Part shown: one piece after another, positions 580 through 64,000 of the stretch
Layout of the letters: every line of letters starts with the position of its first letter
How positions within the stretch are numbered: position 1 is the first letter of the stretch
Source of the DNA: Botryllus schlosseri
Lineage: Eukaryota
DNA: 64,000 nucleotides
Direction: 5' to 3'
NCBI GenBank assembly: GCA_051294905.1
Contig: CM119384.1
Location: forward strand, 9,920,001-9,984,000
Program-made: the position numbers and the translations under genes
Notes under the pieces: generated by a model
Told to the model about the DNA's origin: nothing
The model's input: only the letters and a program-made list of their open reading frames with translations
Database searches by the model: none

Positions 580-3500
580 CTACACGTAAAATAAGTTTGA
601 CTGCAACGCCAGTTACGGTCGCATATAATCGCAGGGAGGTTACAGCGGTTATACGATGCTCCCGAATTCAATAAGTCAACCAAAGGCAGGCAAAGTAATC
701 AGCGTGGTAAATTCATACTGCCACTGAGGCAACAAATAGGCACAATCTTCGAAAACATATCAAGCAGTTATGTGATGAGTAGGGTTGCATTTAAAACAAA
801 CAGTGTTTTAAACAAAGGCCGTTTAAAAAAATTGTGATTTGTTTAAGTTGTAAAATTATGCCATAATTGTGTAAATACTTACAGAAAACATGTTGTACGA
901 GCCTACGGACAATTTCCAGCCGATATAGTCGACGTACATTGATATGGGATGGTTGGAATCCTCAAAATAGTTGGTTCAACAGCAATAGTGCAGATATTTC
1001 GTCAAAGGATCTACATTTACCCTACATTTTCAATTGCCAATGTCAATCCATCATGTCCATCATACCGTCATAATTGAATATTCGGTTTGAAAAAACACAT
1101 GTTTTAAACGAGGGCCGTTGTTTTAAACACATTTGTTTTGAATCGATTTCTGTTTTATATGCAACCCTAGTGATGAGTGTTTCACGCGGTACCTATGACG
1201 ATTTAACACATTAAATTGTTTCTATTTAAAAATATCGCAAATATATCTTATATAAGTATTGTTTAGATCAGTGGGGGCCAATCTTTTTGCTATTCACGAC
1301 CGCATTTCGACTATGCTCGTATAGTCTACGACCGCATTCCAGGGCATAGTCGTAATGAACTATAGCTGGACGCAAAATAGCCTGCCCATGCTAAGCTGTC
1401 CATAGTGGCCATATCCATTTCCGGTGAACTCTGGACTGATCTGCTTAATCATATCGGCTCACTATATACGCACCGAAATCGCGAGTGGTCATGTTATGAT
1501 AGGAGCGGGCACATTACGGCCCGCCACAACGCTTTGTGCGTTTTGAAAACCCCTGGTTCAAAACGAGAGAAGTCTCACCGTCACGAATTTCACGCGACTA
1601 AACACCAGCTTAACCTTATCGCAATTGGCCGCATACCTTTGACGGTCTTGTTTATAATACGCAGCAGCATATACCCGGTGAAGAGAGTGATGGTGGCCAT
1701 GTCGTTGTGATTCCAAATATCGGACAGGTACTCGCGGAGACCCTGAAAACGAAACCCGGTTAGCCTTGCACCACGGCCAGCCAAAAACTGCCTTCTCGCT
1801 CACCTGGTGCATCACCTCTCGGATTTCCTGCGCGAATTTTCCCACCACCCAAAAATAACCTACGATCAGAAGCGGCGGAATCTGGAAGGCGGCAGTAACG
1901 GAAAACATTACAGGTGTTGCGACAATAGGAACGTTATAAATGTGCAGTGTAGTGTAAAATTTCACTCGAGTACCAACCAGGGTTGTGGAGTCCGTCCGCT
2001 TTACCACGGACTCCGACTCCCAATATTCTCTTCACGGGCCTACAATTCCACCAGTCCTGTATATACATCTCCTCAGAAAATTATGCGATTATTACATTTT
2101 TAGTTACTAGTATGACTACCAAATGAATCAACCTACGAAACGAAGTACTCCTACTTTTTCGAAGTACTCGTGCAGTTTTCCTCTACTTCTGGTACTTACT
2201 CAAGTAGAGAGAGTATTCGCTACTTCTACTTCATAATATTTTGTGATCTTCTTACTTACTTTTCGCTATTTTTCGCTATTTTCAGTTTATCAAGTAGAAG
2301 TGGTGTAACCCCCCCCCAATTGAAAGAAAAACTGGGGAATTCTCGGGCTGTTTTCACGGAGTTCTTACTTTCAGTTTGAAGAAAATGCATAAGTCAAACC
2401 CTGTCTGCTTCTGGACTCTGCAAACCTTGCGTATCAGTCTTGCATTCAATCAAAATCAAGAAGCCCAAATCGAATTTGAGAATACTAAGATGCTAATGCA
2501 AGCGAGATTCGCCACAATCGCCCGTCCGTCCTCGTCCGTTGCTCGGTGGAATGAAGAGCGAGACAACAGTAGCGAGAGCAATTTATAGAAATAGCGAATA
2601 TACAATTTAACGGTAATCAACCAATCAAATCGACTATAAGCGTACCATTACAATGATACGAAAAAGCGAATACAAAAATTACGAACCGATTCCTTCAAAA
2701 ACGTCATCAAATAAAGGATAGAAAAAACATGCAGTATCGTAACAAAGTAGTATTGATATTTCTCGTTCAATTCGCTGTATCATTACTTATAGTCATAATT
2801 AGTTTCAGTTATTTTGTCTGTAGAACATACATGTTGAAGTATAAAAGCAAGTGTAGTAATGCTTTTAATTTCCGGGAATAAAGCTAAACAATACGGCCGT
2901 TTTACGATCCATCATTTTTTTTATTAGTGTTTAGTAATCGCGCAAAAGGTTTACACCGCATATGATACTACTTCTTCGTATTGCCCTTCGACTAAACTAC
3001 AGGCCTTATAATATGGGGGCGGGCACCATATCCATGATAATTTCTAAACAGAGGCTTAGTGTCGCATTTTCATATCAATACTATCATTTTCATCCCATGA
3101 TGTGGACGAATGCTTATGCTGTCGAGAATTGGATACCTTCTGGTGTGCATCAATATGAATCAAGCTCTGCACCTTTCGCATAGCTCAATTAGCAGCTTTT
3201 GACAATCCATGCGAACGAATTACGATCGTTTTCACAACTACTTACTTACTTGAGTAGATTTAATGTCACTCAATTCTACTTGTACTTCAAGTAGTTTTAG
3301 GTTGCTAATGAAATAAGTACTTCTAATCGTACTTGAGTATATTTTTTCATCGCTGCTTGAGTAGCTTTCTTGACTACTTTGACCATCTCTGCTTATTGTG
3401 CTCGCAGTAAGAGATTAAGTTTGTGAAGGCTCTCATATACAAGACATCGTTATGGCCGAGAGTCCGGCTTCTTGATCGGTAGGTCGTGGGTTCAATACCC

Positions 3501-6500
3501 GGCTGGGTCAGACCACAGACTTGGTCAGTAAGACTGCGGTGTCCGTGGCTTCCCCTCTTGGTGCTCAGCAACACGGAGGGGTGGTGCAAGACTTAGAAAG
3601 ACCAACAGCGACATATGCACATCAAGCGCTCATGGTGTGCATATGCGCACAGAGCGTATGTCTGTTTATTATGAGTCGGTGTGGATGCCGCAAAATCATC
3701 ACGGACTAAAATTTAAAACGTCCTATCCCTATATACGGGAAAAACTAAATAACTTACGCAACTACACAGCAAGACTTTTGACAAAATTTGAGAACTTTGA
3801 TTCGCATTTGAAGTGGTCAAGTCGGAGTCGGAGCATTTTATCCAGGATAGGAAGATAACCCTGATTTGAACAAACTCGGACTCCAGCCAATATGTTCTTC
3901 TCGAACTCCGACACCAAAGAGCGTTACAAGGTTTCTGTGACTTCAACTCCGCCAAGAGGAAATTTGACGAAACTATACGATCTCGACTATAGAGAGAGTC
4001 TTTATTTTCATCCAACCAAAATACATAACACACGGCAGTGACGGTGGTACAGAAAAAATGCTTGCACAGTATTCGGTATTAGATAGGAATGCTCGATAAG
4101 ACCGCGAAGGTCATCTAGTCTGATCACACCAGCGTCAAACAGGTACACTTGACTCTAAACAGTACTACACAACCCTCGTAAATGGTATACCCACGATGAC
4201 TACTTTCACTACATTTGGATTCGACACAGGTCGCGCACGAAATCTCAAATTCAATCTCGCATATAGAGTCAACCCGTACGAAACACGTCCACAATAAAAC
4301 GGTAGAAACAAACCGGAATGAACCGAAAAATACCGGAAACCGCCCACTGACATTTTCTCGATTCGCCTGCGTCTGCGAGTTCTGCGTCTGAATCGTGTTG
4401 ATCAGCAACAAGAACACGAACACCAGTTCGGACACGACCGAACACGCGAACTTCACGGTGGGATTGCGCATGAGCCGGCCTAATTTCGACTCGGGAGCGG
4501 CGATGAAGAAGATCGACAGCAGAGGAAACATGAAGCCCAGGAACGCCTGGAAGAGGAGCAGGGTTGGCCGATCAGAAAATGTTCCGATTTTTTAAATTAG
4601 ATTATAATTCGAATTCTGGTTCGTTTTGCACTATACAGTTCTCCTGTCGCATTTTCTGGGACACCAGAAATTTGAATCGAATTTAAATTCGCGCGCGGAA
4701 AAATTTCACTGATTCGATAAGAATTATAGATTGCCGGCATCTCACTATGATCAGCCTAAATTTTGGTTGGCCTTGCAAGTTCACAGTCTGGGCAATCCAT
4801 TTTTGATAATATAGCTAATTTCGAAAATTACCTCGCGAGCCACGGGCTGGTCGTTTCTGTTCTAAGTAGTCATGCGCAGAGGTGGTCAGTAACGAAGTAC
4901 TTCTACTTTTTGGAAGTACTCAAGTAGTTTTCCTCTACTTTTGGTACTTACTCAAGTAGATCTGATTTTCTCTACTACTACTTCGTAATATTTTGTGATC
5001 TACTTACTTACTTTTCGCTATTTTCAGCTTGTCAAGTAGAAGTAGTTTAATCCCCCAATACGAAATTGACCGGAGGAATTTCGGGGCTGTTTTCACGGAG
5101 TACCAACATTGAATATTCATAAACGTCAATTAAAGCTAAAAAAATTTGTTGCGCTTGGCGCACAGTAGTTATGGAGTGACAAATATGTTTTCACGAAAGT
5201 ATCAGTGAATATAATTTAGGTACTGGATTGCTTGGTTCCGCTCACACCGCATTCTCGCCCATATCAAATATTTCATCACAGTAAATATGGCCCACCATAA
5301 CATCTGGAAATACCGTTTCGCAATAGCAATTACCTATCATATTGCAATTTAGCAGCCCATGACGTGTCCTGCTATTCTGGAAATCCGGCTTTTTTGAACG
5401 TTACACCTGTTTTAGCAGATCACCTTTGAAGCTTCATAGACAAAAGACATGAAACATATTTTTCGCTTTCTAGAATTCCGAGTATTATACTTTGAGTTCA
5501 GGGATATCTAGATATCCCTGTTTGAGTTCTAATTATTTTCGGTTCTTTTGTCTGCAGTAGATACATGTTGAAGCATTTGTAGTAATGCCTCTATTTTCCG
5601 AAAATAAAGCTACACTAAATATAAATTTTACGATCCACAATATTTGTTATTAACGTATACTAATCACGCAAAGTGTTGAAACCGTATCCGATACAACTTC
5701 TAAGTATTGCTCTTCGCCTAAATTTGGGACCTTATATATAGGGGTAGGGCGCCATGCCATGATATTCTCTAAAACGGGGTCTTCTAGTAAATAAAGGGTT
5801 GGTATCGCATTTCATATCAATACTATAATTTGCATCCCATGATATGCGAAAGAATGCCTATTCTGGCTGAAATTGATACCTCCTGGGATGCATCAATACG
5901 AATCAAGCTCTCTGCATATTCCGCATAGCTCAATTTGCAGCTTTTGACAGTCCATGCGTACGAACGGTTTTCAAAACTACTTACTTACTTGAGTAGATTT
6001 AAAGTCAGTCAATTCTACTTCTACTTCAAGCAGTTTTAGGTAGCTTGTGGAAGAAGTACTTCTACTCGTACTTGAGTAGATTTTTTCGTCGCTACTTCTA
6101 CTCCTACTTGAGTAGCTTTCTGGACTACTTTGACCACCTCTGTCCACTATGACGTCTAAATTGAATATCCGTGACTTCATGACTTGAAAAAAGAACTAAA
6201 AATCATGGTTTCATCAAGGGCCATGTTTTAAACATGTTTGTTTTAAATTGATTTTTGTATGCTTTTTGCAGTTATTCATGGGTGCATGGCTATTCTCGAA
6301 ATTGCATGATGTACTTTCGCGGACAATGCGAAATGATTTATGACACTACAATCCGGTGGAATCTTCGTAAATATATTTAATTACCGTGGTATAGGGGCTA
6401 CATCTACAGCGTTACTTCTATTTCTACTCTTGAGTACTACCGATGGATTTTTTGACCTGAGCCTTCAAAATAAAAGGCGGAGTCCTTGTGGGCCCCTTCC

Positions 6501-61205: not shown

Positions 61206-61311
61206 ATGATCTGGAATTTCGTTCACGTATTAGCGGTTGTAGTGTATCTCCCATTAGAAGTGAATACGCAGTGTAGCGGATACACCTATGAATTGGAATC
61301 CACCGCAATAG
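61206..61311 (+). CDS. GH31 exon 1, signal-peptide-like
   Basis: MIWNFVHVLAVVVYLPLEVNTQCSG...AI G|gtaagt; link to the downstream exons by phase only. Confidence 0.6.
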
Positions 61312-63806
61312 GTAAGTGCCACTTCAGCTACTGAGTGTAGGTAGGCGAGAGGTTGATTGATCTTACCCGCAGACTGACACAATATACGATTATTTTAGCG
61401 GTAGATGTATCAGTACAGTAGTGCGCAGTTTATTTGAACCGTTACAAAGTCGCATTGAATCATGTGGAAAGCACTTCAGATCAAAAACTCACTCTTTCGG
61501 TCCTTAATTTGTTCGTGCAGCGGTTTAGGTAACATGTACTGTAGTCCTTTTTTGAGAAATTTACTGGACACGCGAGAAAGTATTTATTTTTCATCCAACG
61601 GAAATAGGCCTACATGACGAACAGACAGCATCAAAAATGATGCAGAAGAAAACCGCATACACAGTATTCCGTATCGGATAGGAGTGATCGATACACAGTA
61701 GGCCTAACACCCACATTAAACAAGTGTGTCGGTGCTGGATAAAACTGAATGATTTCAGACAACAACATTTTACGATGCGCTGCTGTCATGCGGATTTGAA
61801 TTGTTTAATTAGTACTACAAGTAAATTAGGATGATCGGATTTATTAGTATAGGGGTGGGATGTAAGCGGAGTCGAATACAGTGAAACGGCTTCTAGTTGA
61901 TGTCGAGGAAACTGTCAAGATTCGTAGACCTCTCGCCAGGAGTTCAGTCAAGTGAACAAAATAAAATCACAACTTACTCTATTGCGACACCAGCGGTCTT
62001 TGCATCCTTGCACCAAGAGAATGCTTCAGAAGAGAATCCCATTGAAAGACAGTCAGTTTCTACTACTCGCGTGTATTTTGAGATTACCGAAACGATATTT
62101 GACATATCTACTTTACTGTAACGCGCCTCTTCGTCGATTCCTCATTTCTTTTTATAATTCTGTTGGCTATTTATGATTGAGTGTGTAAGGTGCCCTGCCC
62201 ACCTCTCGTTATAATAAGCTTTTTCAATTGTGTGCAAATACAACTTATTTGTATACCAAAGGACCGAGATGGGAGATTGATTGATTTCACCAAGTCGTTT
62301 CGACTTCTTTTTTTCTTTTCGTTGCATTACCATTCTTGTCGTATCTTGAATCGATTAAAATGATGTTGATAATGATACTGCGAACTCAAGGTTTGCACCA
62401 CCGAAGAACGATTTATAGAAAAGCTGATGTTACGTTTCAGAAATTCGCGTGGGAAAAGTCACGATTTTCCGTCACTCACATGAGTTGACATCATTGGAAG
62501 TTGGAATCGGCACGTCGTCATTCCAATTCGACCACGGAAACTTTCACGTCAGCGAAGCTGTTCAAAGGAGAACAAATTTGAAGTATTTCGAACTGGTCCT
62601 GCCTACGGACGCCGAAGCGATTCAAGACAGAAGCGGGGAAAGCAGCGAGCTTAACGTACTCTTTTTCGAAAATAAACATGATAAAATACCAACGGTGAGT
62701 TTACAGGGTGTGGAATGTGGTTGTGGCTGTTGTTTGGTTTTCATGATGGTTCGGCGTCCTTGGCGATTTTACACCAATATGATACTCTTATTTCGGGTGC
62801 CTGATCTGTCGACTTATAGTATATAATAGCAGGCCTATATATTCATACAAAGTAGCTGCTCCCACATAATATAAAGCACTCAGTGCGTACGTATAAATTA
62901 TGCTTGCATTGAAAAAAAATTTAAAACATGTTTTATATATATACAGATATATTTTTGTTTTCAAGCCAGGACGTCACGGATATTCAATTGTGACGTCATA
63001 GTATATTGACATTGAGAATTAAAAATATAGGGTAAGCTCTTTTGGCGAAATAGGCTTCTAACCCCTGTCCTATACGGGCCGAAGATATTCTTAACCAGGA
63101 CTACATCGTCATGTAGCATTTTTACGGTCGGCGGTCATTATCATCATCATCATCATCATCAGACCATTCATTCTGTACCAATTACATATATCTACGTACT
63201 ATAGCTGTTGAGCCGACTATTTCGAGGATTCCAACCATTCCATATAGTATACGTCGGCTATATCGGGTGTAAATCGACCGTAGGACCATGCTACAGGTTT
63301 TTGGTATGTAATTACAAAATTATGCCATAACTATGCAACTAAAAAGACGCAATTTTCTGTTTAAAATCGTTGTAATCTATCACCTCTCGTTGAGCTCGTC
63401 TTGGGCAGCAATGCAGTAATTTAACCCATTTATAGTCACCCATTTGTTCTAAATGCATCCCTAGGTATAACACGTGATCTAACAACTAGATTTTTCGACG
63501 CAGGCAATAGTAGCGTTCAAATGCGGGATTTATGGGAACAGTCGTATTCACGTGCGAGTACCAGATCACGATGGCAAGCTTCGTTATAACAGACTGTGGT
63601 TGAAATTGCCCGGTTCGGCCGACGAGTTTCTTTATGGCGGTAAAGTGATTAGACTCGGCTCGAATTCTTAATAATCAATCGTCTGCAACAAATATATGCA
63701 GGAGGGGAGCAATACTCGCATTTTAATCTGAAAGGACATGCTTTTCCGATGTGGAGCAGAGAACAAGGGGTTGGGAGGCATCCTACCGTAGTCCGATATC
63801 TGGCAG
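61206..63806 (+). CDS. yihQ: GH31 glycoside hydrolase, YihQ/sulfoquinovosidase-like, spliced, 3' part outside window
   Basis: Exons 61206-61311, 62441-62694, 63504-63639, 63702-63806 join in phase. HS..G.G..GNF and NRLWLKL..YGGGEQYSHFNLKG..FPMWSREQGVGR match the recalled YihQ N-terminal region. Confidence 0.85.
62441..62694 (+). CDS. GH31 exon, N-terminal domain
   Basis: gtttcag|...ACG|gtgagt; IFRHSHELTSLEVGIGTSSFQFDHGNFHV. Confidence 0.85.
62900..63463. mobile_element. Long-form TAGGGTTGCA MITE, diverged
   Basis: Ends AAATGCATCCCTA; (CAT)n block; colinear with 37448-38000. Confidence 0.75.
63504..63639 (+). CDS. GH31 exon
   Basis: acgcag|GCA...GGC G|gtaaag; ...RYNRLWLKLPGSADEFLYG. Confidence 0.88.
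63702..63806 (+). CDS. GH31 exon
   Basis: atgcag|GA...GCA G|gtaggt; GEQYSHFNLKGHAFPMWSREQGVGR. Confidence 0.9.
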
Positions 63807-64000
63807 GTAGGTACGTAGGCTACTCATTATCGCATATGGTTATGTCGTAGCAATCTATCACCTCTCGTTGAGCTCGTCTTGGGCAGCAATGCAGTAATTT
63901 AACCCATTTATAGACAAATGTCTTTTGATACTATATGATTACCGTGGTATACCAGGCCGATAAAGTGATGAGCACAACATTGTTTCATTTTCGAAAAGTA

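What the first reader, a model, noticed from the sequence alone, without database searches (positions are those of the whole stretch)
61206..63806. Intron-containing, apparently secreted sulfoquinovosidase-like (YihQ/GH31) gene in an animal genome
Seen: four in-phase exons, mostly absent from the ORF track, encode IFRHSHELTSLEVGIG..DHGNFHV and YNRLWLKLPGSADEFLYGGGEQYSHFNLKGHAFPMWSREQGVGR. These align motif for motif with E. coli YihQ as I recall it (ILTHS..WIGSG..RGNFSI; HNRIWLRL..HIYGCGEQFSYFDLRGKPFPLWTSEQGVGR). Established: YihQ cleaves sulfoquinovose from the algal and plant sulfolipid SQDG, a process studied mainly in bacteria; some eukaryotic homologues have been noted by sequence. Spliceosomal introns, host MITEs and linkage to SCUBE exclude contamination. 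Inference: the animal secretes its own sulfolipid-digesting enzyme, perhaps feeding gut sulfoglycolytic microbes; origin by horizontal transfer or ancient retention. The catalytic Asp residues and sulfonate pocket lie beyond the window, so substrate is unproven.
Basis: partly seen in the sequence, partly recalled or inferred. Interest (0 to 1): 0.88.

Follow-up and report, generated by a model that had tools for sequence, protein, structure and literature searches.

The report
Tunicate sulfoquinovosidase gene, already a known kind
This is a real, spliced and transcribed animal gene for a probably secreted enzyme that should cut the sulfur sugar off algal sulfolipids, but such animal enzymes were described in a 2026 preprint and are already named in RefSeq, so it is a new (probably tunicate) member of a known kind.

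Summary
Window 61206-63806 carries the first four GT..AG exons of a 14-exon gene that runs 3.3 kb past the window, to G000:C14:9987339. RNA-derived contigs from two studies and raw RNA reads confirm all 13 splice junctions.

The 728-aa product is a GH31 sulfoquinovosidase of the YihQ family:
- Every exon scores best against E. coli YihQ and other solved sulfoquinovosidases.
- All eight diagnostic residues are kept (Q262, Q288, R301, W304, D405, D472, Y508, H537).
- It sits inside a 100/100-supported clade of animal 'sulfoquinovosidase-like' proteins.
- It has a hydrophobic N-terminal leader and no C-terminal anchor.

Uchida et al. (bioRxiv, Feb 2026) describe secreted, gut-expressed animal SQases in 65 aquatic invertebrates, and RefSeq already uses the name.

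New here:
- The host looks like a tunicate, a group the preprint does not mention.
- A second, 44%-identical SQase-like gene lies on contig C10.
- This copy is divergent, with one residue inserted after the nucleophile motif and G539C.
- The reference assembly has a 2-nt CG insertion in exon 9 that no transcript carries. It stops the frame at residue 430, before the nucleophile. It is either a null allele or an assembly error.

Enzyme activity is untested.

The parts
61206..61311 (+). Exon 1: start codon, hydrophobic leader (aa 1-21, nt 61206-61268) and first mature residues
   Evidence: ATG with an in-frame TAA 63 nt upstream. GT donor after 61311. The junction 61311>62441 is seen in spliced contigs of X1, X3 and X4. 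The strongest hydrophobic 11-mer of the whole protein is at aa 5-15.
62441..62694 (+). Exon 2: N-terminal beta-sandwich domain
   Evidence: AG/GT borders. Junctions on both sides appear in RNA contigs. Weak match to YihQ model NF007746 positions 24-94.
63504..63639 (+). Exon 3: N-terminal domain, ends in the ...LYGG motif
   Evidence: AG/GT borders. The junctions 62694>63504 and 63639>63702 appear in RNA contigs, the latter also in 4 raw reads of X17.
63702..63806 (+). Exon 4: GEQ...EQGVGR motif block
   Evidence: 36 bits to NF007746 positions 134-161. It is joined to exon 5 at L004:3056, which is 56 nt past the window end.
63807..64000 (+). Start of intron 4, with a copy of a dispersed ~140-nt repeat. 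Exons 5-14 lie beyond the window at L004 (= window minus 61000): 3056-3176, 3235-3418, 3676-3846, 3912-4029, 4352-4448, 5032-5233, 5311-5430, 5492-5643, 5815-6007, 6110-6339 (stop TGA; G000:C14:9987339)
   Evidence: All downstream junctions are GT..AG and present in RNA contigs. The repeat has at least 19 further copies in the genome. The extra CG of the reference lies at L004:4438-4439 (C14:9985438-9985439).
63373..63437 (.). Second copy of the same dispersed repeat, in intron 2 (approximate ends)
   Evidence: The same ~60-nt core recurs at about 63850-63913. The family is spread over many contigs.

Best explanation
The window holds the 5' third of a 14-exon, 6.1-kb nuclear gene of a probable tunicate. 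It encodes a 728-residue GH31 retaining glycosidase of the YihQ/SmoI sulfoquinovosidase family.

Shown: the gene is transcribed and correctly spliced. The product keeps the nucleophile (D405 equivalent, residue 443 here), the acid/base (D472), the sulfonate-binding triad R301/W304/Y508, and Q262/Q288/H537. It belongs to the monophyletic animal SQase clade.

Inferred: an N-terminal signal peptide sends it into the secretory pathway, and with no C-terminal anchor it is soluble. In the gut lumen, or in lysosomes of digestive cells of this filter feeder, it would hydrolyse the alpha-sulfoquinovosyl bond of SQDG or SQ-glycerol from ingested phytoplankton. That would release sulfoquinovose, which the animal apparently cannot degrade further and which would pass to microbes.

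The assembled reference copy carries a 2-nt insertion in exon 9 that truncates the protein before the nucleophile. Other individuals' transcripts do not carry it.
For: Gene model and splicing: (13 GT..AG joints in contigs of X1, X3 and X4 from two studies; raw-read support in X17).

Family: each of exons 7, 10, 11 and 12 hits YihQ 5AED best, then 6PNR, 8R56 and 5OHS (E 1e-5 to 1e-15). Other GH31 chains appear only for exons 10 and 12, at E about 0.3 or worse. NCBIfam NF007746 (YihQ equivalog) is the top model for 13 of 14 exons tested and is collinear over profile positions 24-676.

Residues: all eight are conserved, and 121 of 129 near-invariant family columns are kept.

Phylogeny: animal clade including this gene has SH-aLRT 99-100 in the quick trees and 100/100 in the careful tree.

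Constraint: 13 synonymous against 9 mostly conservative replacement differences between the reference and the RNA contigs.

Leader, five N-X-S/T sequons and no hydrophobic tail.

Precedent: animal SQases with signal peptides and digestive expression, bioRxiv 10.64898/2026.02.11.705467.
Against: No enzyme assay exists for any animal SQase. This copy is on a long branch (about 1.1-1.6 substitutions per site). It has a one-residue insertion right after the nucleophile motif (ADFGGEY against ADFGEY in YihQ, in four animal SQases and one unnamed relative aligned, and in the C10 paralogue). It also has G539C next to H537. The summed exon scores (about 526 bits) fall just short of the 553-bit equivalog cut-off. 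The reference allele is frameshifted. The signal peptide was judged by eye and hydropathy only. The tissue of expression was not determined, and bulk run X17 gave only a few reads.
Confidence: 0.75

Rival explanations
1. This C14 copy is a divergent paralogue that has changed substrate or is under relaxed constraint and being lost. The more canonical C10 gene would then be the working sulfoquinovosidase of this animal.
For: A second multi-exon SQase-like gene lies at C10:10980422-10991742(-). It has the canonical ADFGEY motif and higher identity to other animal SQases (up to 48.5% against 43.7%). The C14 copy has the G insertion after the nucleophile motif and G539C. It sits on a long branch outside all other animal sequences (97/96). 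The reference carries a frameshift allele.
Against: All eight diagnostic residues and 121 of 129 near-invariant columns are kept, no worse than the C10 copy, which has 7 deviations. Allele differences are mostly synonymous. It is transcribed and fully spliced in three runs. The C10 copy has Y508F, so if anything it departs more from the sulfonate pocket.
Confidence: 0.15
2. In the sequenced individual the gene is a genuine null allele (polymorphic pseudogene), not an assembly error.
For: The reference has ACGCGG where all transcripts have ACGG. This gives TAA two codons later and a 429-residue product lacking the nucleophile. All 3 sampled 31-mers of the 78-nt reference stretch around the site are held by four runs of the probable source sample and by no other run.
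Against: It is not known whether the three sampled words span the CG. Other individuals may miss the words because of nearby SNPs. Small indels are a common error of long-read consensus.
Confidence: 0.5
3. It is an ordinary GH31 alpha-glucosidase or alpha-xylosidase with no preference for the sulfosugar.
For: Many database entries for the family are still named 'alpha-glucosidase'.
Against: Other GH31 structures and models score far lower: E about 0.3 in the PDB search, and the alpha-xylosidase model gives 26 bits against 62 for YihQ. The R301/W304/Y508 triad that YicI and the genome's own GAA-like protein lack is present.
Confidence: 0.05
4. It is bacterial contamination or a recent horizontal transfer into this genome.
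For: Identity to Bacillota and Clostridia SQases (42-43%) is about the same as to other animals (43-44%).
Against: Thirteen spliceosomal introns are removed in RNA. Host repeats lie in the introns. The gene is linked to SCUBE-like exons on a 25.7-Mb contig. It falls within the animal clade at 100/100.
Confidence: 0.01

Closest known systems
Animal sulfoquinovosidases (Uchida et al., bioRxiv 10.64898/2026.02.11.705467; RefSeq 'sulfoquinovosidase-like', e.g. Ptychodera flava, Branchiostoma, Asterias rubens)
   Same: Same clade (100/100), a single GH31 catalytic domain, the same conserved key residues, an N-terminal leader and a multi-exon nuclear gene. [quoted passage not shown]
   Different: Only 43-44% identical to the nearest of them and on a long branch. 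It has no GPI or transmembrane tail. It has HSDIGGY as in bacteria, where the four animal guides aligned have HFDIGG(Y/F). It has one extra Gly after the nucleophile motif. The host appears to be a tunicate, a group absent from the preprint's text and supplements, and two profile searches listed no named tunicate SQase.
E. coli YihQ (PDB 5AED; NCBIfam NF007746) and Agrobacterium SmoI (5OHS), the characterised bacterial SQases
   Same: Collinear over almost the whole length. Q262, Q288, R301, W304, D405, D472, Y508 and H537 are identical. A retaining GH31 mechanism is inferred.
   Different: The bacterial enzymes are cytosolic, intronless and sit in sulfoglycolysis operons. This one has a leader peptide and 13 introns, and no YihS or YihT homologue was found in the genome with E. 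coli queries.
The second SQase-like gene of the same genome (G000:C10:10980422-10991742, minus strand)
   Same: Same family, same animal clade, multi-exon. Q288, R301, W304, D405, D472 and H537 are kept.
   Different: 44% identity over 566 aligned residues. It has the canonical ADFGEY motif and Y508F, and a LINE reverse-transcriptase ORF lies in its last intron. A sister relation of the two genes is not favoured but not rejected (AU p = 0.059).

Membership tests
GH31 sulfoquinovosidase (YihQ/SmoI family) | GH31 TIM-barrel catalytic domain (PF01055) | tested here: met
   For exon 12 PF01055 is over its cut-off (24.3 bits against 23.5); exon 10 is just under (23.0). The genome scan with PF01055 hits C14:9986026-9986637.
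GH31 sulfoquinovosidase (YihQ/SmoI family) | Catalytic nucleophile D405 and acid/base D472 | tested here: met
   WMAD(443)FG aligns to YihQ 402-407. WAGDQ aligns to YihQ 469-473. Both columns are D in the multiple alignment.
GH31 sulfoquinovosidase (YihQ/SmoI family) | Sulfonate pocket R301, W304, Y508 | tested here: met
   GKRVHW aligns to YihQ 299-304. SDIGGY aligns to 503-508. Confirmed in the 72-sequence alignment. The outgroups YicI and the own GAA-like protein lack R301 and Y508; YicI keeps W at the 304 column.
GH31 sulfoquinovosidase (YihQ/SmoI family) | Q288 (with Q262) and H537 substrate contacts | tested here: met
   Q, Q and H are found at the three columns. The neighbour G539 is C here.
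GH31 sulfoquinovosidase (YihQ/SmoI family) | Falls in the clade that holds YihQ, apart from other GH31 subfamilies | tested here: met
   The core clade with YihQ, Bacillota SQases and the animal sequences has SH-aLRT 97-99. The animal subclade with this gene is at 100/100.
GH31 sulfoquinovosidase (YihQ/SmoI family) | Whole-protein score over the NCBIfam NF007746 equivalog cut-off (553 bits) | tested here: inconclusive
   Only exon pieces could be submitted. Their scores sum to about 526 bits, a rough sum that pays an entry cost per piece.
GH31 sulfoquinovosidase (YihQ/SmoI family) | Hydrolysis of alpha-sulfoquinovosides (SQDG, SQGro, pNP-SQ) | not testable with these tools
   This needs recombinant protein and an assay.
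Animal SQase (Uchida et al. 2026) | N-terminal signal peptide / secretory targeting | tested here: inconclusive
   There is an uncharged 4-residue start, a 13-residue hydrophobic core (Kyte-Doolittle 2.6, the protein's maximum) and V-N-T before Q22, plus five sequons. No SignalP run was possible.
Animal SQase (Uchida et al. 2026) | Expression mainly in digestive organs | not tested
   Transcription and splicing are shown, but the tissues of runs X1, X3, X4 and X17 are not known to me.

The most novel reading that the evidence does not exclude
Tunicates carry two old, fast-evolving SQase paralogues. The C14 copy, with an extra residue beside the nucleophile, G539C and a segregating frameshift allele, would have shifted to a different anionic alpha-glycoside or be caught in the act of being lost. 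That would give a natural presence/absence polymorphism for sulfolipid digestion in a filter-feeding chordate.
Probability: 0.15. Interest if true: 0.45.

Novelty: new member of a known kind. Interest (0 to 1): 0.3.

Why it matters
[quoted passage not shown] Animal SQases change that picture, but this has already been argued in print. This locus adds three things. It is a probable tunicate example, extending the family to the closest invertebrate relatives of vertebrates, which themselves seem to lack it. It shows that the lineage keeps two divergent copies. And it offers a possible natural null allele that could be used to test what the enzyme does for the animal and its gut microbes. It also warns that the reference gene model here will be annotated as truncated or 'low quality' unless the 2-nt difference is resolved.

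Tried and rejected
- Before the RNA data I built three exon 9/10 models that rescued the reference frame: a weak GTGCTA donor with acceptors at L004:4959 or 5007, adding 8-26 residues. The transcripts use the consensus donor at 4448 and the acceptor at 5032 and simply lack the CG, so these models were dropped.
- Amphioxus was my first guess from the genome size. It was rejected because the Branchiostoma SQase is only 44% identical and the genome's GAA-like protein is nearest to Styela, Clavelina and Ciona.
- An alignment of one guide protein plus exon pieces (A2) misplaced most exons and was not used.
- A 60-nt query around the CG held too few indexed words.
- The look-up of encoding contigs on the 79%-identical fragment P0001 returned no DNA, so no relative's exon 9 could be read.
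No structure was predicted and no whole-protein NCBIfam score obtained.
- E. coli YihS and YihT queries found nothing in the genome. This means 'not found with this query', not proof of absence.
- Two profile searches listed no named tunicate SQase. Only the best 120 hits are shown, so this is not proof either.

Full report
**Observation.** An ATG at window 61206 opens a 106-nt exon. Three further exons follow at 62441-62694, 63504-63639 and 63702-63806. All have AG/GT borders and join in one frame to give the quoted peptides. An in-frame TAA lies 63 nt upstream of the ATG with no ATG between.

**Extending the gene.** The window is G000:C14:9920001-9984000 of a 495.5-Mb assembly in 219 contigs. 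I fetched the next 27 kb (L004 coordinate = window coordinate minus 61000). Open frames downstream carry the remaining GH31 motifs. From these I built a 14-exon model ending at a TGA at L004:6337-6339, which is C14:9987339.

**Transcription and splicing.** One read-laying run on L004:200-6199 used three contig runs from two studies (X1, X3, X4) and one raw-read RNA run (X17). It showed 13 joints, 12 of them with GT..AG ends at exactly the modelled borders. Single contigs of 1.4-2.2 kb run through most exons. These contigs lack all introns, so they derive from mRNA. This excludes contamination and shows the gene is expressed.

**The frameshift in the reference.** The exon 9/10 joint was reported with seven extra letters between its sides. 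Read out, the transcripts are ...AAG ACG GTG CTA AAG | AAC ATG... . They use the perfect donor at L004:4448 and the acceptor at 5032.
- The reference has ACGCGG where they have ACGG, that is, two extra letters at L004:4438-4439.
- With those letters the reference frame reads ...K T R C stop and ends at residue 430. That is upstream of the nucleophile at residue 443.
- Without them the product is 728 residues.
- All four runs agree on the shorter form.
- A k-mer look-up of the 78 reference letters around the site found all three sampled words only in four runs of one sample, which is flagged as the likely source of the assembly.
- This leans towards a real allele of that individual but does not prove it.

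**Family.** Translated exons 7, 10, 11 and 12 were searched against all PDB chains.
- Each hit E. coli YihQ (5AED) best, followed by 6PNR, 8R56 and Agrobacterium SmoI (5OHS/5OHY), with E from 1e-5 to 1e-15.
- The next GH31 structures appear only for exons 10 and 12, at E about 0.3-0.7.
- The printed alignments place Q288, R301 and W304 in exon 7, D405 in exon 10, D472 in exon 11, and Y508 and H537 in exon 12.
- I took YihQ and YicI from the annotated K-12 record. A 72-sequence alignment confirmed Q262, Q288, R301, W304, D405, D472, Y508 and H537 in this protein.
- YicI and the genome's own GAA-like GH31 lack the arginine and the tyrosine of the sulfonate pocket.
- NCBIfam's YihQ equivalog NF007746 is the top model for 13 of the 14 exons. 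They are collinear over profile positions 24-676 and sum to about 526 bits, against a whole-protein cut-off of 553.
- 121 of 129 near-invariant family columns are kept. The eight departures include G539C, and there is a one-residue insertion directly after the nucleophile motif.

**Relatives and phylogeny.** A phmmer search of 1.84 billion representatives with exon 10 gave full-length relatives. A profile search returned named ones. Many animal RefSeq proteins are already called 'sulfoquinovosidase-like', from Patella, Argopecten, Pecten, Lytechinus, Diadema, Antedon, Asterias, Patiria, Ptychodera, Glandiceps and Branchiostoma. Bacillota, Clostridia, Fusobacteria and Spirochaetia enzymes appear next to them.
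- The best full-length matches to this protein are only 43-44% identical (Ptychodera, Branchiostoma), about the same as the best bacteria.
- Trees nevertheless place it firmly with the animals: SH-aLRT 100 and 99 in two quick trees and 100/100 in a careful tree of 36 rows.
- It branches outside all other animal sequences on a long branch, a position that may be a long-branch effect.
- The gene therefore belongs to one old animal lineage of SQases. The direction and date of any transfer between bacteria and animals cannot be read from these trees.

**Host.** An intronless 892-codon GH31 ORF elsewhere in the genome (C10:26135628-26138306, minus strand) is a lysosomal alpha-glucosidase-like protein. 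Its best named hits are Styela clava (59%), Clavelina (55%), then Ciona and Phallusia (54%), ahead of echinoderms and vertebrates. The genome also has GH6-domain hits, as expected for the tunicate cellulose synthase; that link is my own knowledge. I take the host to be a tunicate. This would explain the long branch.

**A second copy.** Searching the genome with exon 12 found a second locus on C10. tblastn with animal SQases recovers collinear exons over C10:10980422-10991742 on the minus strand, covering about 590 residues.
- It has the canonical ADFGEY motif and Y508F, and a LINE reverse-transcriptase ORF in its last intron.
- It is 44% identical to the C14 gene and also lies in the animal clade.
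- Holding the two genes together costs 12.4 log-likelihood units, AU p = 0.059. A tunicate-specific duplication is therefore neither favoured nor excluded.

**Constraint and targeting.**
- The RNA contigs differ from the reference at 22 exonic sites, 13 synonymous and 9 replacement (mostly conservative). This suggests purifying selection.
- The first 21 residues have an uncharged start, a 13-residue hydrophobic core that is the most hydrophobic stretch of the protein, and V-N-T before Q22.
- There are five N-X-S/T sequons and no hydrophobic C-terminal tail.
- This fits a soluble secretory or lysosomal protein, but it is an inference without a dedicated predictor.
- E. coli YihS and YihT queries found nothing in the genome. 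That is weakly consistent with the animal not catabolising sulfoquinovose itself.

**What is known.** Uchida et al. (bioRxiv 10.64898/2026.02.11.705467, Feb 2026) report the following:
- SQase homologues in 65 animals across nine phyla, including Chordata.
- Conservation of the same seven residues.
- Signal peptides in most of them, with GPI or transmembrane tails in some.
- Digestive-organ expression, including in Branchiostoma lanceolatum.
- The same idea of feeding SQ to associated bacteria.
- They credit Speciale et al. 2016 with first noting animal homologues.

Their text and supplements do not mention tunicates, and no paper in the library links the enzyme to tunicates.

**Verdict.** This is a new, divergent and probably tunicate member of a described family, with a paralogue and a possible null allele as modest additions.

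Noticed in passing
G000:C10:10980422-10991742 (minus strand; L011:9422 to L012:742): A second, multi-exon sulfoquinovosidase-like gene, 44% identical to the C14 gene. It has the canonical ADFGEY motif and Y508F, and lies in the same animal clade.
   Followed up: partly
L010:1282-3006 (+), i.e. C10:10982282-10984006: A 574-codon reverse-transcriptase (LINE-like) ORF sits inside the last intron of the C10 SQase-like gene.
   Followed up: no
G000:C10:26135628-26138306 (minus strand; L009:1628-4306): A single uninterrupted 892-codon ORF for a lysosomal alpha-glucosidase-like GH31 protein with a trefoil domain. Its best named hits are tunicates (Styela clava 59%). Being intronless in an intron-rich genome, it may be a retrogene or a case of tunicate intron loss.
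   Followed up: partly
L004:4438-4439 (G000:C14:9985438-9985439, 1.4 kb past the window end): The reference has an extra CG in exon 9 that is absent from all transcripts examined. It gives a stop at residue 430. It is either a null allele of the sequenced animal or an assembly error.
   Followed up: partly
window 62800-63400 (intron 2): This stretch has RNA-contig depth of 800-900 against about 10-20 on the exons, with many variant letters and loose ends. It looks like a high-copy, transcribed repeat.
   Followed up: no
window 63850-63992 and about 63373-63437: A dispersed ~140-nt repeat (MITE- or SINE-like) occurs in two introns. At least 19 further copies at 68-88% identity lie on other contigs.
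   Followed up: partly
   Followed up: partly
G000:C9:15025585-15025875 and 15068570-15068854 (minus strand): Two GH6-domain hits lie in long open frames (531 and 545 aa). They may be the GH6 part of tunicate cellulose synthase genes, present as a tandem pair.
   Followed up: no
proteins P0007, P0017, P0023, P0025, P0026, P0048, P0065, P0087, P0089, P0105, P0109, P0132: These unnamed YihQ-like proteins keep Q288, W304, both Asp and H537 but have Gln in place of the sulfonate-binding R301. In the trees they lie outside the core SQase clade. They may have a different substrate.
   Followed up: no
protein P0406: A Paramecium sonneborni protein scores as high as the bacterial SQases in the profile search, so ciliates may also carry the family.
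   Followed up: no
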